DNA from: Macrostomum lignano
Taxonomy: Eukaryota
NCBI GenBank assembly: GCA_002269645.1
Contig: NIVC01000292.1
Span: 806,001-870,000 of the forward strand
Length of the DNA: 64,000 nt
Direction of reading: 5' to 3'
This document shows positions 3,034 through 41,929 of this stretch, one piece after another. Each line of letters opens with the position of its first letter. Within the stretch, counting starts at the first letter, position 1. The notes under the pieces were generated by a model, which searched no databases, was not told the DNA's origin, and saw nothing but the letters and a program-made list of their open reading frames with translations. The position numbers and the translations under genes were made by a program.

Positions 3034-3660
3034 TTGCAGTTGGGACCTGCGTACATCACGAGCTATTTATTTCACTTACTGCACTTAAACAATATTTATT
3101 CAGGAATAGGTGGAGCCCGGCTTCATTTGCTAAGCACAGTTGCTTCAGTGTGACAAAAAAAAATTGTCTCGCATTGCTTTACCCAAGTCTGAACTCTCTG
3201 TTGTATTGCACATAAATACAATACTGCTATAATTGCTAAATACGTTCGGAAATAAAATTACAGGGTCGGTAAACTCAGCCCGCGGGACACATAACGGGTC
3301 GTGAAGCCTCCCTATCCGGCTCTTGGGTCCTTTGAAACTCCACAATAGCAATCCATCTGCTCTCAGATTGGTGGCACTTCTCGTACTTCTGGTACTCCCG
3401 GTACTCATATTAAAGCGGCATTTTATAGCTCAAAAGAGCTATAAAATAGTATATTTATACTATTTTAAATTTTTTCCGATTTGTTCGCGTATAGTGCAAT
3501 AACGTAAAACATAGTAAAACAAAGTTTTCACGCTTAAAAACAGATTTTACAATATAACAAATTCAGAAGCTTTTCGTGCGAAATTAAATAGCAGAATATC
3601 AGTCTTTTTGTCAACACGGTACATAAACTTTGCTACGAGAGTTCAGAGAACTGCCACATC

Positions 3661-4552: not shown

Positions 4553-5159
4553 GATGAATTGAATTTCTTTTGATACCTGAACTGCAGCTTGGTAAGCTTG
4601 GTGTTTTCAGTTAGTTCCTAGATAACCCAACCCGTTCCCTAATAAAGAACAGAGCTTAGGGGCGGTGCATGCAAGTCGGCGCAGCTATTTTTAGGCGTTA
4701 CATTCTGTTTGCTGGCAAAAAAGGAACTTTGTGTGCATCACTTGCGCGAAAATCTTTCTGCAACTATCTTTTTTCAAGCCCAACCAAAGCCTTGAGGCGC
4801 TGATCGCACACTACTAGCTAAATTGTACACCAAGAGGCACCTGCAGAGGCTTGGAAAAAAATTACCTGACTGCTCTTTTAGAAGCAATTGCTACCATGTA
4901 CGGCACTCGGACTGCTCATTGTGAGCTCAATATTGATGCCGAGCTGCACACAGCATCTGCGATGTGCATGCAAGCAAGCTGTGTGCGTGTCGAGTCTTCC
5001 GAGCATTGGCAAACTTTTTCCCTGGATGTGGGACTTAAAAAGACTTTGAGGACTTGGAAGGCCATTTTACCATTAAGAAGCAGTTTTTAAGCCCCAATAT
5101 TTTAGTATCTGGGCTCTAATTCGACGCTTAGCGCTTCTGACACCTTAAGGGGGTGTTGA

Positions 5160-5935
5160 CACCGGAGGGGGGCTCCTGACACGTAGGGCGCTCCTGAAAC
5201 TTGGGGGCTTCTGAAACCCGAGTGCTCTGAGGATCCCTGAAACCTGGGGAATTCTTGGGCCTTTTCATATTGCTTGTTCTGGTTCCAGAACCAGAACCAA
5301 TTTGTGTGAAGTATAACTTTTTGTCTCCATAACTAGAGGGAGATACGTGCTATAAAGTTTTTATTATTGAATGACAATCGCCAAGAAGAAAGTGAAAAAT
5401 TGTGCTAAGTTAGGTTGTTAAGGCAGTCAAACATTCAACAGAATTAAATAGTTATACTGCTGTTTTTCTTGGAAGATCCGAACCGATTCTGGTTCTGGAA
5501 TTGGTAATATGAAAAGCCTCCTTGACACCTGGGTGCTCCTGACACCTGGGGGGCTCCTGACACCTGGGGAACTCCTGACACCTGGGGGCTCCTGACACGC
5601 GTGTCTCCTGACACCTGGGGGCTCCTTACACTTAAGCGCTCCTGACATCTGGTGGTTCCTGACATCCTGTAGGTCCTGACACCTGGGGGCTCCTTACACC
5701 TGAGGCTCCTGACACTTAGGGCTCCTGTCACGGGGGCTCCTGACACTTGAGGGCTCCTGACACCTGTGGGTCACGTGAGGCTCCTGACATCCTGTAGCTT
5801 CTGACACCTGTGGGTCACGTGAGGCTCCTGACATCCTGTAGCTCCTGACACCTGAGGCTCCTGACACCTGAGGCTCCTGACACCTGGGGGCTCCTGACAT
5901 CTGCGGGCTTCTGACACCTAGAAGATTTCTGACAT
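5160..5935. repeat. Degenerate ~17-bp minisatellite (GGCTCCTGACACCTGGG), interrupted by unique sequence at about 5245-5515
   Basis: Tandem gctcctgacacct units are visible. The spurious repetitive ORFs 5427-5939 derive from it. Confidence 0.85.
5283..5500. mobile_element. Possible short MITE with 14-bp inverted repeats inserted in the minisatellite
   Basis: ttccagaaccagaa (5283-5296) is the exact reverse complement of ttctggttctggaa (5487-5500). No TSD was recognised. Confidence 0.3.
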
Positions 5936-16169: not shown

Positions 16170-19100
16170 ATCGCCCCCACCTACTTAAAAAATCCTAGAT
16201 CTGCCACTGACTTTTTATACAATTGTTTTATAAATACATTAATAAGATATAGGATAATTATAATATTCTATTCTAGGCTTAGAAGATATAACTTGATATA
16301 GGCCTAGAAAGCACCATTTTTAATTTTATATAAAAAGGGAAAGGAAAAAATTGCTTTTCTTTTTCTATTTTTTTAATAATGAAATTGATATTAAATAGCA
16401 AAGAGTCTAAGTTTTTTTATAGATAAGTACTTGATCATATATTAATACCATTTGCTATATTAACTTTGAAACCTATATGATAGCCTACATTAAGTGACTA
16501 GGTAAATTTATTCTATTATCATTTTTATTCTAAATTTCTAAGTTATAAGCCAAAACAAGATTCACTTTAAATAAATTAATAGTAATTGAAAAATGCCAAT
16601 CAATAATAAACAAATAAATAAATTCTATGCAATATATTAATTAGTATTAGTTTGTTTCATAGTATTTGATAAAGAAAAGACTTGCATCTTTTTTTATTCA
16701 TTGCCTATATAAATATATTTGGTCGATACTCTACTTTGCTAGTTAATGATTAGAGATAAGATAAATATTTGGAATTAAATCAAATTGATTGAATATTTAA
16801 TTTGAATTGAAAAGTTGAGAATCTAAATACTGAATAGTTGCTTTGATATAGGATAAAGATTTAGAACAAGTCAAGAGTTGAGCATTGGTGCTGTTGCTCA
16901 TAACTTAAAGGAAAAATTAGAAATAAATAGTAACTAGGGAATTAAGGACTAAAAAGTTTGGATTTGAAGAGTAAAAAATATGGACTTGTGACTTGTGGGC
17001 TTATGGCTTATAAATGAGGGAGGGGATTAAGAATGAGACAATATGTGGCATATCCTAAGGAAAGGCATAGCAGGGTTGCTTGAGCTTAAGTTGAGCAGTC
17101 ACAAGTACATTTTGTTTGGATTAACTATTTTAGTTTTAGGAGGCTTTGAGACTTTATGAAAAAGATTGTTAAGAATGAACTTTATAGAACATAAGGCCAA
17201 CTCCTCCTTTTGGAGGAGAAAAGGGAAGAACTCCTATCACTGGAATTCTATTCCCTGAAATCTATCAGCTGAATTCCATGACCCAAGTCCCATCATCCAA
17301 CTCTAAAGACAAAAAATCCTCTCCATAAAATTGAACACTATCGAAATGCTCTCCGGGAAATAGGACTCAGTTGAAATTTTCTCTATCAAAAAGAACTCAA
17401 CTCTTAGGATTCATTGGTTAGGGTTAGGGTTAGAGCTTCCACAGAGCTGCATGTTGAAAGATGCCAATAAAAAATATTGAATTAATTGAATAAATTGATT
17501 GTGCAACCAGTTTTTCAGTCAGCCAGTATCAGTCTCAGTTAAAGTTAACAAAATGATTTTGCAATCTAAATCAACCCTCCAATACACAGTGGCAGTAAAC
17601 CCTTCCCCCCCCCCCAACTTTATCTATTACATCCTGCAAAACTGAGTACAATCTTTGCAGAAAGTTAAAAGTATAGAAATCATTTTTAAAATGCTGTGCT
17701 TTTCCTTTTTCACATTTAAAGCAAACAACTTATATCCCCAAACTCAGCGTTGCAAGATCTATCCAGCAATATAAGTCTCTCCTCTCTAAGTTCAAAACTC
17801 AAGGAACAATTAGCATTTGAAATTTCCCGATTTCTAGCATTGGAATATTGAGTGTACATTGACTGCTTGCTACAGTGAGAGGCTTGCAAATTTATGCATT
17901 GAATTTCACTGTCTACCAGTTAGCAAGGCTCCAAGTGTACAAACGCAACCACTTAGAATGCCCTATCCCCTCTCTGGAGAGAAAATGCATTTTCAAGATA
18001 GGAAAAAGTTGTGGCTTAATCACTCAAAATTGATGCAAATTTTTTTCAGAGCAGAAAAAGTGGCCAAAGAAAGTTAAGAAAGTTTTCTGTTTTTTTAACA
18101 AATGATTTTTTAAAATTCAACATCAAAATACCCTATTTGTTGCATAGGAAAATTCTGCGACTGTATTGATATATATAAGTCCCGCATTTGAGTTGCCAGC
18201 TATCTAGGAGATACACATTAAACCTGATTGATCAATTGATCCACTCAGCTTTATATTATAGAACATGAATTTGAAGCACTATTTCTCACAAACTCAGAGG
18301 CCTAAAGCTGGCATTTGGTCTAGGTATGTTTTATTAGATAAGATGCAAGCCTACTGATCAAGGGCTGCTAAATGGAATAAGGCTAGATATTAAATATGAT
18401 GTTGCTTCTAGCAGCAAGTGTACCAAACATTTTCATGCAAATTTAATCATTGCAATGGATGGCTATACCAAAGTGCTTACCTATGTGGCAGTTTTCCAAA
18501 CAATGGAGCAATGAATGGATCATTTATAGAACAATGAAAGTCAGTCCACATTGATAATTGACTTGATAGCAGTTTATTTATAATGAATTCATTTAACCAT
18601 CAATAAGTACTACTGACAAGTGACTAATGAGTAGCAAGATAAGTAATTGATTGAAATATTTATTTAGTATTATTTCATATTCGAATCAAATTGGTTCAAA
18701 AAATTCATCTTTATTATTGACTCCAGCCACTATAAATTGATTTATTAATAGCTAGCCAATCAGAGCAAGTATAAGGTAAATAATACATGATTGTAGAAAG
18801 TGTTGATACCAATGATTAGGGGAGGGGTTTAGCAAGTATAGTAGAATTAGGTTAATATATAGTGTTTCACCTAGATAAATTCAAAATATAGATCATTGAT
18901 ATAGTCTAGATCAGAAAGTGAAGGAAATTGAATAGAAAGAGAAGGAAGAGAAAAAAGATGAGCAATAAAAGGAAAAAGGACATAAGATGAAAAGAGGGGG
19001 AAAAGATAAGAGAAGAGGGGAAAGAACTGAGAAGACAGCTAAGAATAGGCAAACCTTAAGTGGGCCAGATAGCTATTATAAAATTTCAAAGGACCCCCAA

Positions 19101-19686
19101 TGGCCAAACACAAAATCTTTTTGGTCCATCTGTGGCCTATAGGCCAGAGTTTATGAACCCCTATACTAGTCTAAGCTTGTGTAATTGAATATTAGAGTTT
19201 TTACAATAGAAAGGACAAGCCATTTGTATAATATCACATTGAGTATTCTTATATAGATAAATATGTAGATTATAAGTTTGTTTGTAAATAGCCTTATTAT
19301 TACATTGTTTAGCAATTTGACAATCATTATTCGCATATTTACAAACAATGAACAATCATTACTACAAACAATGCATTGTCCATCGGATTGTCAAACAGAA
19401 AAACAATGCAAAGAATCAGCAGTCGCAGCACGTGACAACTGACAACGATTTGTCTATGGCTCATGCCTACTGGCGCTCGCCAGACAATCGTTGTCACGCA
19501 TTGGGACTGCTGATTATTTATCCATTGTATGTTGTTTTATTTTAGGAGGATTCTAATTGAGAATTTGATTTAGTGTGCACCTTAAATGACATATCAAAAC
19601 ATGTTTCAAGACCTTGAGGTATTTTTATGCAGTGACTGGCTCAGTTCCATTAAAAAGTTTTTCCATTGCTAGTGAAAAAAAACATT

Positions 19687-19850
19687 TATGTTAACCACTG
19701 TTGATTTTTACAATGTATATGCATAGTTACTAAAGCTATTAAAAGCACTAAATTTTTAACAAAACTATTATGTTAACCACTGTTGATTTTTACAATGTAT
19801 ATGCATAGTTACTAAAGCTATTAAAAGCACTAAATTTTTAACAAAACTAT
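19687..19850. repeat. 82-bp direct tandem duplication
   Basis: tatgttaaccactgttgatttttacaatg...aacaaaactat starts at 19687 and again at 19769. Confidence 0.9.
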
Positions 19851-20242
19851 TATGTTAATTAAAAATTTGCAATGTTTTTCTGGTTTACAATGTTATATAA
19901 GCATGACTATTAAAATCTATCCAATATTAATTTTTATCAGTATTTTTATTTCAATTTCTATTCCCAAATCAAAGTTTAGACACCTTTGGTATTAATTTAT
20001 TGATTGAGTTAAAATTTATATATATTTTATAGTAAAGCCAATAATAATATTGCTAATTAACTATTACCAGTGATCTACTTAAAATACTTCTTTGTTAAAT
20101 CTAGATACCGAGTATGGACCAGATTTATAGAGCTAAATACCTGACAAATTTTAAAACATTAGCACTTAAATTGTGTGAAAATGCTTCCTAAAGTTTCTTC
20201 AATTTTAATTATAGTTTATTGTAATGATAAAAATTAAGTATG

Positions 20243-23301: not shown

Positions 23302-26300
23302 CGGCGCCTGCCCTCACTCTTGATTGTGTTTTGTAAGATTGTGACTGATAATGAATGACAACTAGGAGTCCTCTAGTGGGGCTCGGTTGCAGGCAAATTC
23401 CAGTCTTGCCACACGGTCTGGTTTCACAGAATCGAGCTAGTAAAACGCTATCGCAGGTTTTTTAACTGGAGGATTGTTTATGGAATTTTCCTGCAAACTG
23501 GTTGATCCCCCGCCGCTCGGATGGTTCCGCTTTTACTCGGACTCGACTGTCGCGATGCCTCCCATGGCGCTTAGACACCCGCCTGTGTTTGCTGCCCCCC
23601 TCCCCTGCTCTGCCTCTGTCTGCTTTTTTCTTACTCAGACTTCAGCGCTTTTCTACATCATCTCAATAAGCAAAGCTTGCTACTGCGTCCGCCCCTGGCC
23701 CTACGGTTCTGATTAATTATTTATTAATTTGCAGTTAATAGCCGCCCTCCTCCAGACTGCCCAAGCCGACTGTTTTGCTAGATTCGTAGCGTACATTTCT
23801 TACATACAGTAAGCTTTAATCTCACGTCACTAATACTGATTAATAATGATAATATTATATAATAATCTGCTTGGCGGACTTGACAGCACAATTGGCCTTT
23901 GGCGCTGAGATATTTTTGCTCCGGTTCAACTTGCGCTTATTGAGCGGCATTCTGTAATTTTATCTCATATCTGCCTTGCGCGGCTTATGTATACTACTCA
24001 CCAAATGCCGATTTGTTAGTAGTATGTATCGCCAGGGACACTATTATAATAATGATAAAATCAATATTTTTACTATTTAGTGCTAAACAGGAAGGTGCCA
24101 TCCAATGTCAGTGCTCATTGGTCCAGTGCAGTCTAGAGTGCGCGCTCGCCAGAGTAACTTCCCCTCAAGACTGGTTGGTCAGCAGTTCTTCCATCCTTGG
24201 TGCAGAATCCGACATCGTCAGCAGCAGAAAGCGGTGGCTTCAAGCCCTCAGTGCCTTTTGTGTGTGTTCGTCCCAAAATAAATCAGTAAGGCAGTAGAGC
24301 TCTTTAATTTTTTCGACGTATGTCGATGTGTCAGCCGGCCTTTTCTCAATATCCCCAGCGAAATGTCCCCTTTCCTGCCGACACTTTTCTCCGTGGTTTT
24401 CTGAGTTCATTGTTCTCCTTTTATTTTTTTAACAACTGTTATCACACAGCCAGTTTGGGAATTACAATTATATTTCTAAGAAAATTTACACGACGCTTCA
24501 TTTTAACGGTTGAGGTTTCTGCTCTTCTATTGTTGCATTCTAAAAACTGAAAATTTGTCTTGCAATTTCCTTTTTTCCGAGCCAAAGTTATAATAAGCTG
24601 ACCTGCAGACGCTAAAAATGAGGATCAAAACATAAGCGAAAATGATGCATATTTTCAAACAGATCCGTTAGACTTGTTTTACATATGATCTCCATTGATT
24701 ATGTTCATGTAAATCTTCTGTGACTATGTATGGGCATTCAGACTCATCACAAAATTTTTCGAAAAACATGCCTTTGAAGACTTGAAGACGCAAGAAATTT
24801 GAGAAGCAGCGCAACTATTGTCAAGCTCTATACGTTAATAAACGGAAAAAACCATTCGGAATATGATTATTCAACGTTTCCTTTTTATTGTGAAAATCTA
24901 TATTAATAGTTAAAAATTTAAAGATAATTCAAAGTAAGTTATGAGCTCACTAACGACGCAAGAGAACATGTCTCAAATGAGTTTGTTTTTATCCTACGTT
25001 TTAACGCGCTTTTCAAAAAGGACGCTCTCGTCTTCCACGGCCCGCCCGACACTTCTTTGCGTGCCCTCGGCAGTGTTCAAACTGCTGCCTGTTGTGACCT
25101 GGAAGTTTTGTGAAAACTGAATAGTTACAAAGGTTAAGTCAAAAAGTTTTACAGTAGCCTAATTAAATAGCTAGGAAATGTGTAGTTGTGCTCTGCATCA
25201 AGCAGATGTGTATTGAAAAGCTTAGAAGTGACTATGCCATTCAAGTTTGGCACCGTGTCAATAATGGGTGTATAAGATATAATAGCGTCGGCTAATTAGT
25301 ATCTTAATGTCATAGGCCTAACTTTATACCACATAATTCGATATATGGCTTTTTATTATATGTTAATGACTTATTGGCTTATTGCATCATAGGCCTATGC
25401 TTGAATGATATCAAGTGCAATATCAAGTACCAAGACTTCCTTGGTAGTATAGCATTGCTGGCTTTGATCCTTTACCTGTAACTAAAGTTGTAACCTATAT
25501 TTTCTCTTCTAATTATTAGTCACATTGGCACTCTTAGCTGATTAAGTCATTGGTTAATATCCTTTGTAGGGAATTGTGGCTGCTTCTATATATAACTATA
25601 GCTTACAATGATGGTGGTAGTGGTAGATAAGCTAAAATGCACAGATAGAACTTGATATATTTCTATCCTAGTATATAGAGACTTTGTCTTGCAAAGCAGC
25701 CTCAATCTGGGTTTTTTGTCTAGCTACTAGATATTAAGTGCAATTTTGCATCTATTCTAAGGTCTAATTTTAAGGTGCAAATTTTAAAAGCAGGGTTTGA
25801 CACTACTGCAAGTTATATAACTAAAAAACATTTTGTTATGCTAAGCTATCATTTTTCAGTTTCTTACAAACTTGAAAGTTAAATTTAAGAAGCCAAATAA
25901 TGATTTTTAATATAATAACTATTTTAATACATTTTGTTTTATTGACTATTGATATTGTAGCTCATGAGATATGACTCACTTTGCTTTAATAATTTAACAT
26001 CATTGGAAACTAGTTTAATTTATTAAAATCTAAATTACATGTATCTGAATCAAAATTAAATTTTAGAGACTGAAATCACATTGTGGCTCATATTTTAGGG
26101 TGCAATTTTGAATTCTTAGATGCTATTTGTACCAATTTATATAAAAAACCAAGGTCTTAATACTATGTTACTCTTTTGCTAATGGCAAAATGGGAGGTTG
26201 CAATCAAGGTATTAAAGGTATATGCTTAGCTTAGATAGGCCTAAGTTGAACTTGGCTTCAACAAATTTCTTGTACTGAGATTTGTCTTTGCTTTGTATTT

Positions 26301-26486
26301 CCCAAGTGTAGGATTTATATAGACTATTGTCTATTACAAAGCTGCAATATGCCTCAATAGCTTTTATTTCTGTTGATCATCAATTGGCTTATATGACCAG
26401 GTAGCTCTAAAACTATGATAGCCTAATGATGTATTGAGCAGGACTCTTTTTCAGCTGTATTTCATAGTTAATCATATCATTAACTA

Positions 26487-26796
26487 CATATATGCGCAAC
26501 CTCCAAATTTCGGTCGGCCGTGCGACTTAGTTTTAACAAAAATGCGACATAGTTTTTGGCCAAAAAATGCGCCAAAAAAAGGCCACAGACATGTAAAAAA
26601 ACCCAAAAGCAAAATTAACGCAACTTTGGGTAAATGGCAGGAGTAACTATAACTGTCTTATAAAGCCAAAATGCATCGTCAGCTACTTAGTACTACTACT
26701 CTGTGTTTTTCGGGTCAACATTTTTGCGACTTCCTTGGTTGGCCGCCAAATCGGTCGGCCGGATCGGCCGACTCGGCCGACTGTTGCGCATGTATG
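26487..26796. mobile_element. 310-bp hAT-like MITE with 8-bp TSD
   Basis: TIR CATATATGCGCAAC versus GTTGCGCATGTATG (13 of 14 match). TSD ATTAACTA lies at 26479-26486 and 26797-26804. It has CpG-rich internal tcggccga repeats. Confidence 0.8.
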
Positions 26797-27055
26797 ATTA
26801 ACTATACATTTTACTATTTTGACCTTGGGTACTTTGGTATAGCAGATGAAAGGCTAGGTATAATAGGTGATGTTTGTCTCTGACATTTTAGTGTTTAAAA
26901 AGCAAAGACAAAGATTGGCAATAGTTGTTAATTCATAATGTTGATTCTTCTACCCTGTTGTCTTATCTTGCATCCCAGAATTAATGTTATATAAATATAT
27001 TGGTTTGGGCCTTGCGCCTATTAATTGCTCTGTTTATTATAGGTGCTTCTTACTC

Positions 27056-27469
27056 CTAGGAGTGTCCTCTGAGTAAGCCTCTGTATAAGCACAAGCCATC
27101 TTCTCAAACTCATTTTGTCATGCCAAGCCTCTCAAGTGATGCAATGCCTTCCTAAGACACTGCTCCTGACCTGCCTTCTGGGACATCCATTAGGAGCTCA
27201 ATGTCAATTGTCATTCCAGCATGTCACTTAGAGGCAAAGTTGAGATTCAGCTAGCCTCATTTGATGGCAACTGCCTAAACTATAGCTGTGAGGTTCAGGA
27301 AGATGCTCTAGTATAGACAAGGCAGGTCATCCTGCAGAATGTAGAGGTATAGGATCACCTTGGGTGCCACATCTCAAGTGACGTCTGTGAATGCCTTCTC
27401 AAACTCTATTGCCTCCTAAGCAATGGCCATGACACAGAAAGGCAACTGGACTAGGTTGGCCACATAGTC
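27056..27469 (-). pseudogene. Fossil coding frame destroyed by TAG/TGA stops, possibly a KAP-family NTPase fragment
   Basis: A 138-codon frame with GC3-rich codon usage reads DYVANLVQLPFCVMAIA*EAIEFEKAFTDVT*DVAPKVILYLYILQDDLPCLY*SIFLNLTAIV*... It has 6 TAG, 5 TGA and 0 TAA stops. The family guess rests on one motif only. Confidence 0.5.
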
Positions 27470-28274
27470 TCGTCATATGGACCATTGACATTCCATGGTA
27501 GGCATATATGAGAGCTACCTGGGTTTGCAAGGCCACAGACAAGGTCATGTCAATCAGGGAGGCCACTACCCTCTTGGGACTTTTTATGATGATATTGATT
27601 GATATTGCTACCTACTATTGCTGTCTAGGCATTCAGGGGTTGCATTGCTAAAGCCTTGCTAAGAGCAGGCCTACTAAGCTGTATGCAGGTACTAGTCATG
27701 CTGCCACACTTTAGCAGTTCTGCAAAGTGGTATAGGTTCAAGTTGCATGTGCTTGCACATTTAGCAGAGCCCAAATGCCAGCCAATTTTTTATCAATTAT
27801 AATAGCTTCTGTAAGCATCTATATTGATGCACTTAAACTAATTTTGTTTTAATTTGCAAGTTGCTAAGTAACAACTTCTATAGTTGTTATAGCATCCCCT
27901 AGCTACGAGGGGCTAGCTACGCATAGTCATACGAGTAAGTTTTAGGCTTTCTTATTACTATTACGAGCTATGCCCAAAACAGGGTAAGTTAGAAAGCATT
28001 GCAGTTGCCCATTGCCTCTAATTATCCAACCCTCTATCATCGGTGTGAGCATTTGGTTCTGCTTTACTAATTGCTCACCTGAGCGCTGAGTTCCTCTCCC
28101 TCAATCAGCTAGTTCGCTGCACCTGTCACCTCCACCCCGCTGCCCCTTTAATTGCTGGGCCAGCCATGCAGTCAGTTTGGTGACAGAAGCCGCTGTACAC
28201 CCTGCTCAGGAGTACATAAGCATGAATGCCTGCTTATGCAATGCAACCCGCAGCCAAGCAGCCAGCCAGCAGCC

Positions 28275-28724
28275 ATGGAGCGCACCTACATCATGATCAA
28301 GCCGGACGGTGTCCAGCGCGGCCTTGTTGGCAAAATCATCAAGCGATTCGAGCAGCGCGGCTTCCGCCTGGTTGCCATGAAGATGATGCAGCCCGGCCGG
28401 CCGCTGCTTGAGGAGCACTATGGCGATCTCAAGGCCAAGCCGTTCTTCCCCGGCCTTATCGACTACATGCTGTCCGGCCCGGTGGTCTGCATGGTCTGGG
28501 AGGGCGAGGAGGTGGTCAAGATCGGCCGCATGATGCTGGGCGCCACCAAGCCGATTGACAGCCTGCCCGGCACCATCCGCGGCGACTATTGCATCGTGAC
28601 TGGCCGCAACATCGTGCACGGCTCGGACGCGGTGGCCTCCGCCCAGAAGGAGATCGCCCTGTGGTTCAAGCCGGAGGAGCTGGTGGACTACAAGCTGGCC
28701 AACCATGGCTGGATCTACGAGTAG
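28275..28724 (+). CDS. NME: Nucleoside diphosphate kinase, group I (NME1/2-like), 149 aa, intronless CDS
   Basis: [19 protein letters not shown]..., GTIRGD and the catalytic NIVHGSD motif. ATG at 28275, TAG at 28724. Confidence 0.95.
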
Positions 28725-29212
28725 ATCTGGAGCATGACCTGCCCCAGCTGTCTGATGCGACTGACTCTGTCTGTTAATGCTATAGCCCAACTCCTCAGTA
28801 ACTTAGCTCTCTTTTCATTCTCTATATTATCTGGGTTTGTAGCTTTTCTTAGTCTGTTCTGGTTCCTCTTCTCTGTTCTCTATGAAGCTTTGGCACCAGC
28901 TTTTGCCCTTGATGCGTTAGATTATGAGCACCCTAATTGCAGTGTTAACAATGCAGAGACCAGTTGCTTTAGTTTGTTAAGTTGGCCCTGCCGATTGCCC
29001 CGGCAGAATTGACCGCCTGTTCTTCTTGCAATACACGAATGAAAAGCGCTTAAGTTGCTTGCTTGTCTCCAGCTTGTTGGTCAACTGCTTCTTTGCACTT
29101 GTTTTCAATTTTGATTTTTTTCCCGTAAGGCTACTGGCAGTAGTGTTTTGAGCAAGCTAGGCAAATTTATTTCTTAACAATAAGTAACTCAAAGTAGGTC
29201 TCTGCAACTATC

Positions 29213-29702
29213 TTGTATTCCCAGTGTCTCATACCCGGTATTTCCTGTGTCTCATACCCGGTATTTCCAGTGTCTCATACCCGGTATTCCCAGTGTCTCA
29301 TACCCGGTATTCCCAGTGTCTCATACCCGATATACCCAATGTCTCATACCCGGTATTCCCAATGTCTCATACCCGGTATTTCCAGTGTCTCATACCCGGT
29401 ATTTCCAGTGTCATACCCGGAATTCCCACTGTCTCACACTTGGTATTCCCAGTGTCTCATACCCGGTATTCCCAGTGTCTCAGACCCGGTATTCCCAGTG
29501 TCTCATACCCGGTATTCCCAGTGTCTCAGACCCGGTATTCCCAATGTCTCATACCCGGTATTCCCAGTGTCTCATACCCGGTATTCCCACTGTCTCATAC
29601 CCGGTATTCCCAGTGTCTCATACCCGGTATTCCCACTGTCTCATACCCGGTATTCCCAGTGTCTCATACCCGGTATTCCCAGTGTCTCAGACCCGGTATT
29701 CC
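29213..29702. repeat. 23-bp minisatellite (TTCCCAGTGTCTCATACCCGGTA)
   Basis: About 21 tandem units. It is the source of ORFs 29213-30075. Confidence 0.95.
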
Positions 29703-30241
29703 GGGTTTCGCACGGGCACAGGTTTCGCACGAGATCACAGCTAGTATATGGGACATTATGTATTCGTATTCTATCCATGGCCGTCTGGTTGCCCCTCCCC
29801 ATCCCCACTACTCCCGTCTACCGCCACCCGCCTCCTCCCTCCCGTCTCTCCCGCGCCACTTTCCCGCCATCGATCGATCGAGCCGCCTCTCCATCTGCTG
29901 CTACGGCAGCTTTTGCTGCTTTCGGGCTTATCTGACTCCCCTCTCTTTCCCTTGTAAACCCGGGGGCGTGCGCGCATCTTCCCTTAGGCCGGGGAATATT
30001 TCTCTCTCGAGTGGCCCTCGCTGCCCACGCGGCCTGTCTTTATTGGCTGTTGCAGCTGCCAGTCTATGGGACTGACGGCATTCCACTCGGCGTGACTCAC
30101 CCGGCCGTCAGTGGGATGTATATAATAACCCACTTATTTGGCTTAGTCTGCTTTCGCTTATAAGATAGCGCCTTATTAATAACTTATCGTGTTTTATTAT
30201 TCCAGCTTTCAAGCTAAACCAGCTACAGACACTGCCGAATC

Positions 30242-32471
<2,230 letters not shown>

Positions 32472-33054
32472 GAGACGCCTAATTAGCATCTCATTAGTTA
32501 TGCGGAGTGCGAACTGAACTGACCAGAATGCTTCATCATTGCAGCTTACCGAAAGCTCCTCAATTTTAATCTCCAGCTTCGCAACTGAGTCACAGCTTAC
32601 TCGATTGACCAGATATCCAGTTTATTAGTAATAGTAATTCTCGGCTGAAATTTTGCTTTTAATTTACCCGACTCCGTATTCGAATATCCGACTCTGCTTT
32701 TCTAAGTTGCAATTTTTATTTTCGTTTTTAAATAACTGCATTTTCACTCTATTATTAATATTTAGCTGAAATTTTATTACCGCATTGCTTTGCTAATTCA
32801 TTATTGTAGTTAATTAATTATTAATTTAGTCGCTGCTCTTTTGCCGCTAATCTCGGTAAAGCTGTGCGTGAACTTTAAACAGCGCAATGCAATTCATTTA
32901 TCGTTTAACTTATTAATATCCATTCAAATTTATAACAGCTTCCAATAACTGACGCTTGCCGAGCGCAAGTTTACTAATAATTACCGTCTTCGATCGCTTA
33001 TAAATATCACTGTGATTGTCAGCCTTGTGTTCTTTATTTCTGGGTCAGCTGAAT

Positions 33055-35186: not shown

Positions 35187-38100
35187 TCAACTCTTCAGCT
35201 CGTCCTCGTATTGCTTGCGGAAGCAGTCGCCAACTGGGAAGAAATCCCAGCAGCGCTTCTGGTACAGCTCCCACACGTATGTCTCCTGGCCAGTGTACTC
35301 AGTGTCCGGCTTGTTGATCAGGTGCATCAGGAAGAACCTGCGGTGGGGTGGGGGCGGCCGGTTTCGGCTGGAGTTCTTGGCACCTGGTAGACTGGGTTGG
35401 CACCTGGTAGACTGGGGTGGCACCTGGTAGACTGGGTTGGCACCTGGTAGACTGGGGTGGCACCTGGTAGACTGGGTTGGCACCTGGTAGACTGGGGTGG
35501 CACCTGGTAGACTGGGTTGGCACCTGGTAGACTGGGGTGGCACCTGGTAGACTGGGTTGGCACCTGGTAGACTGGGGTGGCACCTGGTAGACTGGGTTGG
35601 CACCTAGTAGACTGGGGTGGCACCTGGTAGACTGGGTTGGCACCTGGTAGACTGGGGTGGCACCTGGTAGACTGGGTTGGCACCTAGTAGACTGGGGTGG
35701 CACCTGGTAGACTGGGGTGGCATCTGGTAGACTGGGGTGGCATCTGGTAGACTGGGGTGGCACCTGGTAGACTGGGTTGGCACCTGGTAGACTGGGGTGG
35801 CATCTGGTAGACTGGGGTGGCACCTGGTAGACTGGGGTGGCACATGGTAGACTGGTGACATCTAGTAGACTGGTGACATCTAGTAGACTGGGGTGGCACC
35901 TGGTAGGCTGGGGTGGCACCTGGTAGACTGGGGTGGCACCTGGTAGACTGGTGACATCTAGTAGACTGGGGTGGCACCTGGTAGACTGGGGTGGCACCTG
36001 GTAGACTGGGGTGGCACCTGGTAGACTGGGGTGGCACCTGGTAGACTGGTGACATCTAGTAGACTGGGGTGGCACCTGGTAGACTGGGGTGGCACCTGGT
36101 AGACTGGGGTGGCATCTGGTAGACTGGGGTGGCACCTGGTAGACTGGAATATGTCATCTGGTGGACTGGGTGGCACCTGGTAGACTGGGGTGGCACCTGG
36201 TAGACTGGGGTGGCACCTGGTAGACTGGGGTGGCACCTGGTAGACTGGGGTGGCACCTGGTAGACTGGTGACATCTAGTAGACTGGGGTGGCACCTGGTA
36301 GGCTGGGGTGGCACCTGGTAGACTGGGGTGGCACCTGGTAGACTGGGGTGGCACCTGGTAGACTGGTGACATCTAGTAGACTGGGGTGGCACCTGGTAGA
36401 CTGGGGTGGCACCTGGTAGACTGGGGTGGCATCTGGTAGACTGGGGTGGCACCTGGTAGACTGGAATATGTCATCTGGTGGACTGGGTGGCACCTGGTAG
36501 ACTGGGGTGGCACCTGGTAGACTGGGGTGGCATCTGGTAGACTGGGGTGGCATCTGGTAGACTAGGGTGACATCTGGTAGACTGGGGTGGAACCTGGTAG
36601 ACTAGGGTGACATCTGGTAGACTGGGGTGGAACCTGGTAGACTAGGGTGACATCTGGTAGACTGGGGTGGCACCTGGTAGACAGGGGTGGCACCTGGTAG
36701 GCTTGAATATGTCATATGGTAGACAGGGGTAGCACCTGGTAGACACAAGTGTCACATCTTAGATACAAGTGCCAGAGTTTATGCAGCACACTGATTTAGA
36801 TTTTCTGGTAAATGTCCAAAACAGGCTACTGGAGCCATTGGTGAGTAGAACGCAGTGAATTTGACTCTCACATGTAGTTGGCGAAGTTGTGCTCCTTGTC
36901 CACGTGCTTGTCGAAGCCGTGCGGCACCTTGTCGAAATACTCCTTGCCGATGCCGCAGATGAAGCAGTTGGACTCCATGTTCTCCTTCACCTGCTCCAGC
37001 TGGTCGCGGAGCTCGCCGAAGGCGTCAATGATCAGACCCTGGGGGTTGCGTTTGAGGGACAGTGGCGTAAATAATTATTATTTACCGAAATTCAGCTACT
37101 GAGAGCCTGATTGGGGATAATCCCCCCCAGACCGGCTGATTAGGGATAATTCTCCCCAAGACCGACTGATTGGGGATAATTCTCCCCCCCCCAAGATCGG
37201 CTTTGTGGGATAATTCCCCCCAGACCGGCTGATTGGGGATAATTCTCCCCAAGACCGACTGATTGGGGATAATTCTCCCCCCCCCCAAGATCGGCTTTGT
37301 GGGATAATTCCCCCCAGACCGGCTGATTGGGGATAATTCCCCCCAGAACGGCTGATTGGGGATCTCCCGCCCAAGACCAGCTGATTGGGGATAATCTCCC
37401 GCCCAAGACCAGCTGATTGGGGATAATCTCCCCCTCCCGCTAACACCGGCTGATTGGGGATAATCTCCCCCTCCCGCTAACACCGGCTGATTGGGGATAA
37501 ATCTGAAGAAAATTCGGCCAAGAATCCGCAAGAGCTCGGCACTGGCCCGCTGTGATCCCCCGACAGCCGCAGGCGCCCACCTGGATGATGGCCAGCAGGA
37601 TGACGATCACGAAGAAGAAGAAGGTGATGTCGAACAGGATGCGGTACACCTCGTAGGGGTCGCCGTCGGGCGACTCGATCTCGTCGCCGATGCCGCCGCC
37701 GGCGCGCAGGCCGGTGTGCATGTGAAACACGAAGCAGGTCAGCATGTCGTGGCACTTCAGGTCCTTCGCCCCGCCGTCGCCCTCCTTGACGTAGAACCGG
37801 CGGAAGAAGTTGAAGGCCAGCACGGTGTACAGGTAGATGATGATGGAGGTCAGCAGCACCGTGAGCACCAGCTGCTTGCCGTTATGCGTCACGGACTGCA
37901 GGATGGTGCGCAGCGTCTTGAAGCCGATGGCCACGTCCAGCAGGTGGCAGGCGAAGAAGAACTGATTGAAGTTGCCGATCAGCGAGGCGATCAGGTAGAA
38001 CAGCAGGTACAGGAAGGAGTTGTCGGTGAGGATCACGCCCCACTTCCACACCAGGTACTGCACATCCAGCCCGCCCAGCAGCCGGCTGATGAGGCCCGGG

Positions 38101-41048
38101 CTGGGCGCCGCCTCGTCCGACTTCTTCATCCCCAGCAGCTTCACGATCTGCTCCTCGTCGAACTGGTCCTGGAACTTGTTCAGCACCTTCTTCTTCACGA
38201 ACTTATCCCAGTACATGTCCGGGAAGCTGGGGGTCGGCAGCACCAGCTTGTCCCAGTGGGCGCCGATGTTGTCCTCGCCTGCGGGCCGGGCGGCGGGGAG
38301 ATTTGTGACTGGCTGAGCCCTGCCCTACCCTCTCCCCTGCCCTCTGCCCTGCCCTCTCCCCTGCCCTCTGCCCTGCCCTCTGCCCGCCCCGGCCGGCAGC
38401 TCACCGGGCTGCTCGGAGATCCACATGCCGTCGAACTCGAGCATCCTGCTGATCTCCTTCTCCCTCTTGAACACGACCAGCGGCACCTTCAGGCAGTTGT
38501 AGGCAATCAGCATGCTGAGGGCGAAGCAGGTGTGCAGCGCGGCCAGGACTCGCAGCAGCGGCCGCAGGTAGTACACCGAGTCTGACAGGGTCACCCACTC
38601 CTCCGGCTCCTCCGCCTCGGCGGCCGCGGCGCCCGCAGCTTCGGTGGCGTTGGTGACCGCCTCCACCGTGGCGTTGACCGCCGCCTTCACCGCCTCGGTG
38701 ACGGCGGCAGCGATTCCGCCTTCAGCCGCCTCTCCAGTGGCAGCGCCGGCGGCGCCTCCGTCGGTGGCGGAGGTGACGCGGAAGAACAGCAGTATGAAGT
38801 TGATGAAGAAGGCCAGGCCCAGGGCCAGCAGCTTGAAGTTGTAGAAGTTCCTGGCGAACAGGGACAAGATGAAGGTGGAGGTGTCGATGGTGGGCGTCTC
38901 GCACTCTAGCTCCTCCTCCTCGGTGAAGGTCGTCGGCCCGTCGAACTCGAAGGAGTCTCGGCGCTGCAGGTCGCTGGACTGGTCCACCTTGGCCTCGTCC
39001 AGGGCGCACAGCTCGCGGGGTCCAGCCGCTCCAGGGCGAGCTGCTCCTCCTCGGTGAGCAGCCACGGCTGCTTGGCCTGCAGCGCCTCCTGCACCTCCAG
39101 GCCGGTGTCCTCCGGCGCGAAGGCCAGGGCGAGGGCGAGCCGGCCGAGGTAGGCGAAGCTGCTCTTCACCACGAAGAAGACAAAGGTGAGCAGGGCGAGG
39201 AAGAGGCGCCAGGCGCCGCGCACCAGGCTGGCCGGCGTCAGGCCGCGCAGGACGGCGAAGAAGCCGCAGAAAAGCGAGCGGAAATTGCGGGAGGCGAACC
39301 GCCTGGCGCTGGAGAGCGCGCTGCTCACCCGCTTGACCCGCTCGCCCTCCAGGATGGCCTTCACGGCCGCCACCTGCGGGGTGGGCATTGACGGAGTGGG
39401 TCTTAGTGTGAGAGTCTCGGAGTGAGTCTCATAGTGAGACTCTTGGAGTGAGTCTCATAGTGAGACTCTTGGAGTGAGTCTCATAGTGAGAGTCTCGGAG
39501 AGAGTCTCATAGTGAGAGTCTCGGAGTGAGTCTCATAGTGAGAGTCTCGGAGTGAGTCTCATAGTGAGAGTCTCGGAGTGAGTCTCATAGTGAGACACTT
39601 GGAGTGAGTCTCATAGTGAGAGTCTCGGAGTGAGTCTCATACTGAGACACTTGGAGTGAGTCTTATAGTGAGAGTCTCGGAGTGAGTTTATACTGAGACA
39701 CTTGGAGTGAGTCTTAAAGTGAGAGTCTTGGAGTGAGTCTCATAGTGAGAATCTCGGAGTGAGTCTTAGTGTGAGAGTCTCGGAGTGAGTCTTAGTGTGA
39801 GAGTCTCGGAGTGAGTCTTAGTGTGAGAGTCTTGGAGTGATTTTTTTTAAAGTATTGAATTGTGTATCGACATGAGTGTCAGTGAGAGTCAGTGCGTCAG
39901 TCGCTCTCAAGGCATGGTAAGGCAAGTCCCAATATGCCTCAGCCCCATCAGCTCACCTGCCGGATGCTGAGTCCCAATGAGCCTCAGCCCCATCAGCTCA
40001 CCTGCCGGATGCTGAGTCCCAATGAGCCTCAGCCCCATCAGCTCACCTGCCGGATGCTGAGTCCCAATGAGCCTCAGCCCCATCAGCTCACCTGCCGGAT
40101 GCTGAGTCCCAATGAGCCTCAGCCCCATCAGCTCACCTGCCGGATGCTGAGTCCTTCGCCCTCTCCGCTAACCCGTTGCGCGTGCTGCATCTCAAAGATG
40201 GTGTCCTCGCAGAAGTTGATGAAGGACTCCAGCTTCTCCTTGTCGCCGCCCTCGTTGATGACGGAGTAGAGGAAGGAGCGCTTGGACTCCTTGATCTGCG
40301 GCGCCTCCCACTGGTCGATGTTGCTCTGCGTCACCTCGAAGTAAACCCGCTCGATGCGGCCGCTGGAGCCCAGAATCTCGATGCGGCCCAGGTAGGGCTC
40401 GAAGTAGTCCAGCATGCACTGCGCCTTGCCCACCAGCCGCTCCAGCCGGGGGTCATTGGGGATGTGCTCATGCAGGTTGACCAGGAGCAGGGCCAGGTTG
40501 AAGCCGATCTCCTTGGCGGGGTTGTGGAACCGCTCTGTGAATTCGTTGAAGTCCACCTTGCCGTCTTGGTTGGCGTCCACGCAGTTCATGATGTACTCGA
40601 TTTCCTCTCTGCGGGTGCGGCCGGTTCATGAGTCTTTGTTTTTGAGGCTGTCGGTTTCTGGCTGCTTTTAACGCAATCAGTTCCTTGCCTGGATCTGGAG
40701 ACTATCAAGGTCTTTGTCTAGAAATTGTTGAAGTCTTTGTCTAGAGTTTTTTGGGGTCTTTGCGTAGAGATTATTGGAGTCTTTGTCTACATAATTTTGG
40801 GTCTTTGTGTACAATATTTTAGAGTCTTGGTCTAGAGACAATCAGCGCCTGTTCCAGATCTGAAGAGAATTGGAGTCTTTGTTCAAATAAAAACGCACTG
40901 CTAGCAACAATCAAAACTCGCGCACTCACTCAGAGTACATCTTCTGCTGCATCATGGCGTGCCGAAATTCCTTGTGTGAAATCACGCCGTCGCCGTTGAT
41001 GTCGAAAGCCTGAAATTTTGACGATTGATTGATTGATTGACTGATGAC

Positions 41049-41089
<41 letters not shown>

Positions 41090-41894
41090 TATTGGTGGTT
41101 GGTTGGTTGGCTGGTTGATTGACTGACTGATTGGTTAATTGATTGGTTGGTTGGTTGGTTGACTGATTGATTGACTGATTGATTGGTTGATTGATTGGTT
41201 GGTTGGTTGGTTGGTTGACTGATTGATTGGTTGATTGATTGGTTGGTTGGTTAGTTGGTTGACTGATTGATTGGTTGATTGATTGGTTGGTTGGTTGGTT
41301 GGTTGACTGATTGATTGGTTGCTTGATTGGTTGGTTGGTTGGTTGGTTGACTGATTGATTGGTTGGTTGGTTGGTTGGTTGGTTGGTTGGTTGGTTGGTT
41401 GGTTGACTGATTGATTGGTTGATTGATTGGTTGGTTGGTTGGTTGGCTGGTTGATTGACTGATTGATTGGTTGATTGATTGGTTGGTTGGTTGGTGGTTG
41501 GTTGGTTGGCTGGTTGGTTGGTTGGTTGACTGATTGATTGGTTGATTGATTGGTTGGTTGGTTGGTTGGCTGGTTGGTTGGTTGGTTGACTGATTGATTG
41601 GTTGATTGATTGATTGGTTGGTTGGTTGGCTGGTTGATTGACTGATTGATTGGTTGATTGATTGGTTGCTTGGTTGGTGGTTGGTTGGTTGGCTGGTTGG
41701 TTGGTTGGTTGACTGATTGATTGGTTGATTGATTGGTTGGTTGGTTGGTTGGCTGGTTGATTGACTGATTGATTGGTTTATTGATTGGTTGGTTGACTGA
41801 TTGATTGGTTGATTGATTGATTGGTTGGTTGGTTGGTTGGTTGGTTGGTTGGTTGGTTGGTTGGTTGGTTGGTTGGTTGACTGATTGATTGATC

Positions 41895-41929
<35 letters not shown>

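What the first reader, a model, noticed from the sequence alone, without database searches (positions are those of the whole stretch)
27056..27469. Fossil ORF killed only by TAG/TGA stops: a CpG plus CAG/CTG C-to-T decay signature (RIP-like or CHG-methylation-like) in an animal genome
Seen: one minus-strand frame keeps the GC3-rich codon style of the live genes (gcc, ttc, aag, atc, aac, ggc) for 138 codons, yet it has 11 stops (6 TAG, 5 TGA, no TAA), no CGN Arg codons, and four CTA Leu codons, which are rare in the intact genes here. I count only 2 CpG in 27061-27780 despite moderate GC. Each stop reverts to CAG or CGA by one T-to-C change, and CTA reverts to CTG (CAG on the other strand). Established: 5mC deamination gives C-to-T; CHG methylation is a plant chromomethylase pathway; fungal RIP mutates mainly CpA in repeats. 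Inference: a process here marks or mutates CAG/CTG as well as CpG in silenced domains, which is not the standard animal pattern. This is the best candidate for an undescribed system in the window.
Basis: partly seen in the sequence, partly recalled or inferred. Interest (0 to 1): 0.82.

Follow-up and report, generated by a model that had tools for sequence, protein, structure and literature searches.

The report
No fossil gene; CpG-decayed flatworm spacer
The "dead gene" is a chance reading of non-coding DNA upstream of a housekeeping gene in the flatworm Macrostomum lignano, but the patch has lost nearly all its CpG sites and its three genomic copies differ unusually often at CAG/CTG cytosines, which hints at non-CpG methylation and needs a genome-wide test.

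Summary
The window comes from the flatworm Macrostomum lignano. The fossil-ORF reading fails. The chosen frame has the most stops of all six frames. Its GC3 is 0.53, against 0.89 in live exons. Dinucleotide shuffles give 8.1±2.5 stops per frame. No frame matches Pfam, and the stop-reverted translation matches nothing among 5.8 billion proteins. A 754-bp indel removes the left 40% of the span in one paralogous copy.

The real feature is a 1.1-kb CpG-depleted domain (26788-27905, CpG o/e 0.06) with a CpA/TpG excess, about 0.35 kb upstream of the NDK exon. RIP is excluded.

I aligned the window to two other copies of the locus. CpG transitions are about 6-fold more frequent than CHH transitions (odds ratio 8.7), but only in CpG-poor patches. 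That is an ordinary mosaic-methylation footprint.

Unexpectedly, transitions in this domain concentrate at CAG/CTG: 11 of 66 CWG cytosines against 7 of 360 other non-CpG cytosines (p=7e-6). The excess is weak or absent elsewhere in the locus. The mechanism is only inferred.

The parts
26788..27905 (.). CpG-depleted domain D1 (GC 0.41, CpG o/e 0.06, only 3 CpG). It contains the finding. It is non-coding spacer, or possibly an outron/intron, upstream of the NDK exon.
   Evidence: CpG positions are and composition. There is no other copy in the window, L001 or L002 apart from the orthologous positions.
27056..27469 (-). It is a chance reading, not a decayed gene.
   Evidence: It has 11 stops, the most of the six frames, and GC3 of 0.53. 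Shuffles give 8.1±2.5 stops per frame. It has no Pfam hit and no homolog.
26816..27796 (.). Eleven C/T (G/A) differences among the three locus copies at CAG/CTG cytosines: 26816, 26880, 27253, 27283, 27323, 27332, 27337, 27418, 27623, 27666, 27796. They fall on both strands (5 and 6). T alleles occur in all three lineages, and the 5' neighbour varies.
   Evidence: The site list is. The alignments are A1 and A2.
27418..27418 (-). The only polarised CWG event.
   Evidence: Alignment A1, column 210.
27540..27541 (.). An ancestral CpG caught decaying twice. L001 has CG, the window has CA and L002 has TG.
26465..27219 (.). A 754-bp segment present in the window and L002 but absent from L001. Its ends share short similar sequence (CAGC..TGT..). 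Its length is not a multiple of 3, and it removes the left 40% of the claimed ORF in that copy.
26487..26796 (.). A CpG-rich patch with (TCGGCCGAC)n, bounded by a 14-nt inverted repeat and possibly a small foldback/MITE-like insert. It shows six CpG transitions between the window and L002 within about 200 bp.
25339..26495 (.). The neighbouring CpG-free domain D2 (0 CpG in 1156 bp, GC 0.30). It shows a weaker CWG excess: 6/30 against 23/258.
28254..28724 (+). The nucleoside diphosphate kinase exon, which is the nearest live gene. The annotated product starts PSSQPAAM directly after a CAG acceptor, so the gene is cis- or trans-spliced.

Best explanation
Span 27056-27469 is non-coding DNA of Macrostomum lignano, and the 'ORF' is a chance reading frame. 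It lies in a 1.1-kb CpG-depleted patch (26788-27905) between a Jiv90-domain gene and the NDK gene.

The patch looks the way it does because its CpGs have been, and still are, hypermutable. In this locus, CpG transitions are about 6-fold more frequent than other cytosine transitions (odds ratio 8.7), but only inside CpG-poor patches. Elsewhere the rates are about equal. This is the classical footprint of germline 5-methylcytosine deamination in a mosaic methylated genome, and M. lignano retains DNMT1 and DNMT3. CpG decay directly produces the TpG/CpA excess and many TGA/TCA trinucleotides. Those trinucleotides appear as stops in every frame.

On top of this, the three available copies of this particular patch differ at CAG/CTG cytosines about 9 times more often than at other non-CpG cytosines. 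CAG/CTG is also depleted relative to TAG/CTA and CAA/TTG. The most economical mechanism is that dense de novo methylation of the patch spills over to CWG sites, as DNMT3-type non-CG methylation does, and that these sites then deaminate.

Shown: the composition, the absence of coding evidence, the context-specific differences among copies, and one polarised C>T at CAG.
Inferred: methylation itself, its enzyme, the C>T direction of most CWG events, and why this patch is affected.
For: Organism and locus copies.

No ORF.

CpG depletion and CA/TG excess.

Domain-restricted CpG hypermutability. Where local CpG o/e is below 0.25, 8 of 24 CpG cytosines vary, against 66/1211 CHH (OR 8.7, p=4e-5). At mid o/e the figures are 15/167 against 38/1132. 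At o/e of 0.6 or more they are 29/620 against 58/1907 (OR 1.6).

Double CpG decay at 27540/41.

CWG excess in D1:
- 11/66 against 7/360, p=7.5e-6.
- In the three-copy part, 9/43 against 4/218, p=1.8e-5.
- In the finding span alone, 6/33 against 3/147, p=0.0014.
- D1 is the top outlier of 60 sliding windows.
- In the subset free of ascertainment by the window's own TAG content, where the window keeps C and another copy has T, 6/72 against 3/381, p=7.5e-4.

Composition: (TWG/CWG)/(TWH/CWH) is 2.9 in the finding and 2.0 in D1. It is 0.5-0.8 in CpG-normal non-coding DNA of similar GC.

Literature: M. lignano keeps DNMT1 and DNMT3 and has low-level 5mC (PMC11292947, citing Wasik 2015). Methylation patterns in free-living flatworms were undescribed as of 2022 (PMC9246332).
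Against: The CWG excess rests on 11 events, and only one is polarised.

The excess does not generalise:
- All non-coding DNA gives CWG 45/1138 against CHH 162/4250 (OR 1.04).
- Window against L002 alone gives OR 0.96.
- CpG-poor DNA outside D1 gives OR 1.27, not significant.
- Tandem arrays show no excess.

If CWG were 9-fold hypermutable for a long time, CAG/CTG should be more depleted than observed (Markov o/e 0.67-0.76).

The composition index also correlates with GC.

No methylation data were available. Exons keep CpG o/e of 0.8-0.96, so the methylated compartment would be spacers rather than gene bodies, which is atypical for invertebrates.

The weak 3-base GC periodicity is not explained by a purely non-coding history.
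Confidence: 0.7

Rival explanations
1. Only ordinary CpG decay is real. The CAG/CTG excess in this 1.1-kb patch is a statistical or local-heterogeneity accident, for example a few clustered events, unrecognised context effects, or mosaic assembly of paralogs. No CWG-directed process exists.
For: There is no excess over the whole locus (OR 1.04; OR 0.96). There is none in tandem arrays. Outside D1, the CpG-poor DNA gives only OR 1.27. Five of the 11 events sit within 85 bp (27253-27337), and two of them lie in one CTGCAG palindrome. Non-CG mutational footprints are not an established feature of animal genomes (own knowledge).
Against: D1 is the extreme of 60 scanned windows. It also survives restriction to the three-copy part (p=1.8e-5). 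Events are spread over 980 bp, both strands and all three lineages. The composition points the same way. The relative CWG rate rises from OR 0.45 in CpG-normal DNA to 1.3-1.7 in CpG-poor DNA even without D1.
Confidence: 0.4
2. The span is the fossil of a GC3-rich protein-coding gene, inactivated only by C>T changes at CpG and CAG/CTG that created TAG/TGA stops and CTA codons.
For: The frame has the best mean codon log-frequency of the six frames (-4.47 against -4.56 to -5.01). It shows a GC phase pattern of 0.52/0.36/0.53, with nominal p of 0.005. Two of its TAG stops (27418, 27253) are CAG in another copy.
Against: There is no Pfam match in any frame and no homolog of the stop-reverted protein. 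The frame has the most stops of all frames and no fewer than shuffled sequence. GC3 is 0.53 against 0.89. Five TGA stops exceed the roughly 2.7 CGA+TGG codons expected in 138 live-style codons (one search gives CGA at 15 of 3110 codons; the TGG share of about 1.3-1.5% is my estimate, not counted here). A 754-bp indel that is not a multiple of 3 removes 27056-27219 in L001. No paralogous intact gene exists in about 136 kb of the three loci.
Confidence: 0.04
3. The patch is a relic of some coding sequence on either strand, such as an old transposon ORF or exon fragment, that is now too decayed for homology detection. This would explain the weak 3-base periodicity, independently of the frame and stops the reader chose.
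For: GC periodicity gives chi2 10.7, in the top 4.5% of non-coding windows. About 75% of the M. lignano genome is repeats (own knowledge).
Against: There is no homology in six frames. There is no second copy in the window, L001 or L002. There are no convincing terminal repeats. Periodicity of this size occurs in 1 of 37 non-overlapping non-coding windows by chance.
Confidence: 0.1
4. A RIP-like, repeat-induced point mutation process acted on the duplicated locus copies.
For: The locus exists in at least three copies. CAG>TAG is formally a CpA>TpA change.
Against: (CpA+TpG)/(ApC+GpT) is 1.66-1.80, where RIP gives values below about 1.03. CpA/TpG is in excess (o/e 1.34-1.44). TpA/ApT is 0.75 in the finding. 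CAA, CAC and CAT cytosines are not hit (3 of 143, against 7 of 36 for CAG). The copies are 92-100% identical, with no general C>T storm.
Confidence: 0.01

Closest known systems
Mosaic germline CpG methylation with 5mC deamination (CpG depletion with TpG/CpA excess), as in invertebrate genomes that keep DNMT1/DNMT3
   Same: The patch shows extreme CpG depletion with a CA/TG excess. CpG transitions are about 6-fold more frequent (odds ratio 8.7), but only in CpG-poor patches. Independent CG>TG and CG>CA decay of one site occurs in two copies. The species retains DNMT1 and DNMT3.
   Different: The depleted compartment here is AT-rich intergenic or intronic spacer, while exons keep CpG o/e of 0.8-0.96. 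The usual invertebrate pattern targets gene bodies. Methylation itself was not measured.
DNMT3-dependent non-CG methylation in mammals (mCAG in pluripotent cells and oocytes, mCAC in neurons)
   Same: It affects cytosines followed by A (and less often T) then G. It occurs inside domains that are densely CpG-methylated and needs no dedicated enzyme. The excess here co-localises with the strongest CpG-depleted patch, and CAG (7 events) exceeds CTG (4 events).
   Different: Mammalian mCH is not known to leave a clear evolutionary substitution footprint. CAC is not hit here (0 of 22). The enzyme and the modification are unverified in the flatworm.
Plant CHG methylation by chromomethylase CMT3
   Same: The target is a symmetrical CWG trinucleotide. 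The events here occur on both strands in equal numbers, in an apparently silent, CpG-decayed domain.
   Different: No chromomethylase is known in animals. CCG could not be tested, because the domain has no such sites. There is no evidence for an H3K9me2 feedback loop. This is resemblance by footprint only.
Fungal RIP (repeat-induced point mutation)
   Same: It involves C>T transitions in duplicated DNA, including CpA>TpA.
   Different: CpA is in excess here rather than depleted. Only the CAG subset of CpA is affected. The RIP indices fail, and animals have no RID homolog requirement.
Unitary or processed pseudogene
   Same: Both show many in-frame stops.
   Different: There is no parent protein. 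The frame is no better than chance, and the span is interrupted by an indel polymorphism between copies.

Membership tests
Pseudogene / fossil ORF | Detectable homology of the conceptual translation to a protein or domain family | tested here: not met
   Pfam on six frames of 26790-27990 with stops reverted gave 0 families at E<=1. The stop-reverted 138-aa frame against 5.8 billion proteins gave none at E<=10. tblastx against the three loci gave only orthologous hits.
Pseudogene / fossil ORF | The true frame stands out from the other frames and from shuffled sequence, with fewer stops and host codon bias | tested here: not met
   The frame has 11 stops against 6-9 in the other frames. Shuffles give 8.1±2.5. 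GC3 is 0.53 against 0.89. Only a weak GC periodicity is seen, with p=0.005.
5mC-deamination CpG decay (mosaic methylation footprint) | CpG o/e far below 1, with a compensating TpG/CpA excess | tested here: met
   CpG o/e is 0.04-0.06 and CA/TG o/e is 1.34-1.44. There are 3 CpG in 1118 bp.
5mC-deamination CpG decay (mosaic methylation footprint) | CpG transitions elevated over other cytosine transitions in sequence comparisons, specifically in the depleted domains | tested here: met
   By local CpG o/e class, CpG against CHH cytosines vary at 33% vs 5.5% (low), 9.0% vs 3.4% (mid) and 4.7% vs 3.0% (high). At 27540/41 the CG is lost two ways.
5mC-deamination CpG decay (mosaic methylation footprint) | Presence of 5mC and DNMT1/DNMT3 in the organism, and methylation of this locus | not testable with these tools
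   Only literature is available. DNMT1 and DNMT3 are retained and 5mC is at low levels in M. lignano (PMC11292947, PMC9246332). No locus-level methylome is available.
Fungal-type RIP | CpA depletion: (CpA+TpG)/(ApC+GpT) below about 1.03 and TpA/ApT above about 0.89 | tested here: not met
   The values are 1.80 and 0.75 in the finding, and 1.66 and 0.96 in D1.
CHG / CWG-type non-CG cytosine methylation (plant CMT3-like or DNMT3 side activity) | Excess C>T at CAG/CTG relative to other non-CpG cytosines in alignments to paralogs | tested here: inconclusive
   The feature is met in D1 (11/66 against 7/360, p=7.5e-6; 6/72 against 3/381 in the ascertainment-free subset). It is not met locus-wide (OR 1.04) or in tandem arrays. 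Only 1 of the 11 events is polarised.
CHG / CWG-type non-CG cytosine methylation (plant CMT3-like or DNMT3 side activity) | Measured 5mC at CHG/CWG sites and an enzyme able to write it (CMT, or DNMT3 with CWG activity) | not testable with these tools
   No methylome or whole-genome gene inventory was accessible. One 64-kb window cannot show the enzyme.

The most novel reading that the evidence does not exclude
In Macrostomum lignano, some densely CpG-methylated spacer domains also carry symmetrical CAG/CTG cytosine methylation in the germline or neoblast lineage. This methylation is heavy enough to make CWG cytosines about 9-fold hypermutable and to leave an evolutionary footprint. That would be a CHG-like layer of methylation in an animal, written by a flatworm DNMT3 with unusual flank preference or by an undescribed enzyme.
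Probability: 0.3. Interest if true: 0.75.

Novelty: new variant of a known kind. Interest (0 to 1): 0.45.

Why it matters
The fossil-gene claim can be dropped. Two results remain useful.

First, the locus gives direct sequence evidence that M. lignano has sharply bounded patches where CpG is hypermutable, next to patches where it is not. Flatworm methylomes are essentially undescribed and most flatworms have lost DNMT1/3. So this points to a mosaic germline methylation landscape that targets spacers rather than exons.

Second, suppose the local CAG/CTG hypermutability is confirmed genome-wide and matched by measured mCWG. It would then be the first evolutionary footprint of non-CpG methylation in an animal germline. 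It would also make the substrate specificity of an invertebrate DNMT3 directly testable in an RNAi-tractable, transgenic model.

Tried and rejected
Searches for a coding origin or other copies:
- Pfam on all six frames, with stops reverted to Q/R/X, gave nothing.
- The large protein search with the stop-reverted frame gave nothing.
- Self-BLAST, TRF and repeat finding in the patch showed no other copy, no internal repeat and no convincing TIRs.
- Rfam and tRNA scans of the window found nothing.

Attempts to obtain more copies of the locus:
- Exact look-ups of window ORFs (NDK from two start codons, and the ankyrin protein) were not on record.
Via its cluster id it returned only the same contig as L002. 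So no fourth copy or outgroup could be obtained.

Mechanisms and context tests:
- RIP was rejected on the dinucleotide indices.
- APOBEC/AID-type deamination was rejected because the 5' neighbours of the 11 CWG events are A, T, C and G without a motif.
- The Dcm-like CCWGG and GCWGC motifs are not matched.
- Tandem-array unit variation, used as an independent test of CWG hypermutability, showed no excess. It is a noisy test because variants spread by amplification.
- Exon substitutions are uninformative for context because of codon constraints.

Literature: no M. lignano methylome paper is in the library, and Wasik 2015 is not held.

Full report
**What the window is.** The 64-kb window is animal DNA with GC3-rich exons and introns packed with minisatellites. 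The exons are an ankyrin-repeat protein, a kinase, a low-complexity protein ending in a Jiv90 domain, nucleoside diphosphate kinase (NDK), beta-tubulin and a ryanodine receptor. The NDK product is identical to a protein of Macrostomum lignano assembly GCA_002269645.1.

Two other copies of the whole locus were fetched: L001 (contig NIVC01000874.1) and L002 (NIVC01000934.1). Neither is identical to the window, so three copies are available. This fits the known hidden polyploidy of this species (own knowledge). The finding lies in the spacer between the Jiv90-domain gene (ending near 23301) and the NDK exon (28254-28724). That exon begins directly after a CAG acceptor.

**Checking the observation.** CTA is indeed rare in live exons (3 of 3110 codons).

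The frame is not GC3-rich. GC by codon position is 0.52/0.36/0.53, against 0.58/0.40/0.89 in live exons. It is also the frame with the most stops of all six (11, against 6-9). Over 26790-27990 it has 37 stops in 399 codons, against 23-28 in the other frames. Dinucleotide-preserving shuffles of the span give 8.1±2.5 stops per frame, so 11 lies on the high side of random.

The absence of TAA reflects the general scarcity of TAA on this strand (2 of 26 stop trinucleotides across the three frames). The absence of CGN codons is simply the absence of CpG.

**Is it a fossil ORF?** No supporting evidence was found.
- Pfam finds nothing in any of the six frames of 26790-27990, with stops reverted, at E<=1.
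- The stop-reverted 138-residue protein finds nothing at E<=10 among 5.8 billion sequences.
- There is no related sequence elsewhere in the window, L001 or L002.
- Five TGA stops are more than the roughly 2.7 CGA+TGG codons that 138 codons of live-gene usage would supply. One search gives CGA at 15 of 3110 codons. The TGG share (about 1.3-1.5%) is my estimate and was not counted here.
- In L001 a 754-bp segment (26465-27219) is missing. Its length is not a multiple of three, and it takes out the left 40% of the claimed ORF.

One residue of doubt remains. There is a weak 3-base periodicity of G+C (chi2 10.7, nominal p 0.005, rank 22 of 491 non-coding windows). I cannot explain it and list it as unexplained.

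**What is really there: a CpG-decayed patch.** CpG is nearly absent from 26788 to 27905: 3 CpG in 1118 bp, o/e 0.06, at GC 0.41. CpA/TpG is in excess (o/e 1.34-1.44). Similar patches occur at 25339-26495 and 16172-20242, while exons and other spacers keep CpG o/e of 0.6-1.0.

RIP is excluded. (CpA+TpG)/(ApC+GpT) is 1.66-1.80, not below about 1.03.

The three-copy comparison shows the decay in action. I scored about 15.6 kb of aligned, non-tandem, non-coding sites. I stratified them by local CpG o/e and compared the fraction of CpG cytosines and of CHH cytosines that show a transition:

| Local CpG o/e | CpG cytosines | CHH cytosines | Test |
|---|---|---|---|
| below 0.25 | 33% | 5.5% | OR 8.7, p=4e-5 |
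| 0.25 to 0.6 | 9.0% | 3.4% | OR 2.8, p=0.002 |
| 0.6 or above | 4.7% | 3.0% | OR 1.6 |

At 27540/27541, L001 keeps CG, the window has CA and L002 has TG. These are two independent decays of one CpG.

This is the established footprint of germline 5mC deamination in a mosaic methylated genome. M. lignano is reported to retain DNMT1 and DNMT3 and to have low-level 5mC (PMC11292947). The genomic pattern in free-living flatworms was undescribed as of 2022 (PMC9246332). CpG decay also explains the many TGA/TCA trinucleotides (CGA>TGA) that read as stops in every frame.

**The CAG/CTG component.** I expected the paralog alignment to refute this, and over the locus as a whole it does. Window against L002 in 13.6 kb of non-coding DNA gives CWG 20/864 against CHH 87/3616 (OR 0.96). 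All three copies give 45/1138 against 162/4250 (OR 1.04).

Inside the finding's own CpG-poor patch the picture is different. Eleven of the 18 non-CpG transitions fall on CAG or CTG cytosines: 26816, 26880, 27253, 27283, 27323, 27332, 27337, 27418, 27623, 27666 and 27796. All were verified by eye in alignments A1 and A2. The tests on this patch are as follows.

| Comparison | CWG (or CAG) cytosines | Other non-CpG cytosines | Result |
|---|---|---|---|
| D1, CWG | 11/66 | 7/360 | OR 10, p=7.5e-6 |
| D1, CAG alone | 7/36 | 11/390 | p=2.8e-4 |
| Three-copy part of D1 | 9/43 | 4/218 | p=1.8e-5 |
| Window keeps C, another copy has T | 6/72 | 3/381 | p=7.5e-4 |

Further points on this signal:
- In a sliding scan of the locus this patch is the top outlier of 60 windows.
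The last row of the table removes that bias, and the excess survives.
- The events lie on both strands (5 and 6) and have every 5' neighbour. T alleles occur in all three lineages. This argues against an APOBEC/AID motif, a strand-specific process or a single artefact.
- Only one event is polarised: 27418, where the window has TAG and both other copies have CAG.
- A second stop (27253) is CAG in L001.

Composition agrees with the substitution data. CAG/CTG is below its dinucleotide-based expectation (o/e 0.67-0.76), while TAG/CTA (1.16-1.38) and CAA/TTG (1.31-1.33) are above theirs. The index (TWG/CWG)/(TWH/CWH) is 2.9 in the finding and 2.0 in the patch. It is 0.5-0.8 in CpG-normal spacers of similar GC. 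My estimate is that CpG decay itself does not produce this shift.

**Limits of the CWG result.** The excess is small in number and mostly unpolarised.
- It is weak in the other CpG-poor patches: 6/30 against 23/258 and 8/133 against 37/885. CpG-poor DNA outside D1 gives OR 1.27.
- It is absent in tandem-array variation.
- The composition index is confounded with GC.
- The relative CWG rate rises from OR 0.45 in CpG-normal DNA to 1.3-1.7 in CpG-poor DNA even without this patch. That contrast could partly reflect unannotated constrained GC-rich segments.
- A 9-fold hypermutability sustained for long would have depleted CAG/CTG more than observed.

I therefore regard the local excess as statistically real. 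I give about 0.4-0.45 to its being a context-directed process, and about 0.3 to the specific reading of CWG methylation.

**Mechanism, with what is shown and what is inferred.**
- Shown: the sequence is non-coding by every test available. CpG is lost and is still being lost preferentially here. Differences among copies in this patch concentrate at CWG.
- Inferred: the patch is densely methylated in the germline or neoblast lineage, which is the established pathway of 5mC>T at CpG.
- More speculative: de novo methylation spills over to CAG/CTG, as DNMT3 enzymes do in mammalian pluripotent cells and oocytes (own knowledge), and these sites then deaminate. A plant-type chromomethylase is not required and cannot be tested here.

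**Comparison with known systems.**
- The patch is a member, by footprint, of the class of methylation-decayed CpG-poor domains. The composition and substitution criteria are met. Methylation itself is untestable here.
- It is not RIP, because the indices fail.
- It is not a pseudogene, because the homology and frame criteria fail.
- The CWG footprint resembles plant CHG methylation and mammalian mCAG only in the trinucleotide affected. Membership is inconclusive.

**Verdict.** The headline claim of a fossil ORF killed by stops is a chance reading. The 'RIP-like' label is wrong. The CpG decay is real and ordinary in kind. It is informative for a flatworm whose methylome is undescribed, and notable for sparing exons.

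It does not survive as a locus-wide rule. It deserves a genome-wide, polarised test and a methylome before any claim of a new system.

Noticed in passing
window 1-39611 vs L002; window 17607-38496 vs L001: The window is a third, non-identical copy of a triplicated locus (Jiv90 gene, NDK, beta-tubulin, RyR) of Macrostomum lignano. Similarity is mosaic. The window is 99.5% identical to L001 at 17607-19776. It is about 100% identical to L002 at 27592-32750. It is distinct from both at 25593-27594. This suggests gene conversion between copies or haplotype-switched assembly.
   Followed up: partly
window 26487-26796: A CpG-rich patch with (TCGGCCGAC)n is bounded by a 14-nt inverted repeat (26487-26500 and 26783-26796) and may be a small foldback/MITE-like insert. 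Six of the eight transitions between the window and L002 here are at CpG, so this young-looking CpG-rich insert appears to be decaying fast.
   Followed up: partly
window 26465-27219; 25590; 27593: Structural differences exist between the copies. L001 lacks 754 bp (26465-27219), with short similar sequence at both junctions. L002 carries an extra 1290 bp at window position 25590. L001 and L002 both carry about 170-180 bp at 27593 that the window lacks.
   Followed up: partly
window 27100-27500: A weak 3-base periodicity of G+C is present (0.52/0.36/0.53; chi2 10.7, nominal p 0.005, rank 22 of 491 non-coding windows). No protein homology is found in any frame.
   Followed up: partly
whole window, e.g. 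16172-20242, 25339-26495, 26788-27905 vs exons: CpG depletion and CpG hypermutability are confined to AT-rich spacer or intron patches, while exons keep CpG o/e of 0.8-0.96. This is the opposite of the usual invertebrate gene-body methylation footprint.
   Followed up: partly
window 28236-28275: The annotated NDK products start at PSSQPAAM (L001), directly after a CAG acceptor, or are joined to a first exon 31 kb upstream (L002). The gene is probably cis- or SL-trans-spliced, so the CpG-poor patch may be transcribed as an outron or intron.
   Followed up: no
window 58842-59582; 35378-36744; 41023-42023; many others: Introns of the RyR gene and the spacers are packed with minisatellites (53 TRF rows). 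One is a 14-mer x53 array at 100% identity. Another is a 20-mer x68 array of 1.4 kb without a single CpG at GC 0.59.
   Followed up: no
window 3449-5227; L002 10700-11443, 13562-14633, 19518-21485: A dispersed repeat family (77-86% identity between copies) is present in several places of the locus copies. It could serve for a consensus-polarised mutation spectrum.
   Followed up: no
window 30242-32471: The beta-tubulin gene model was reconstructed as exons 30242-30298, 30986-31450 and 31659-32471. It gives a 444-aa product identical to PAA74618.1. The first intron is an (AGAC)n array.
   Followed up: yes
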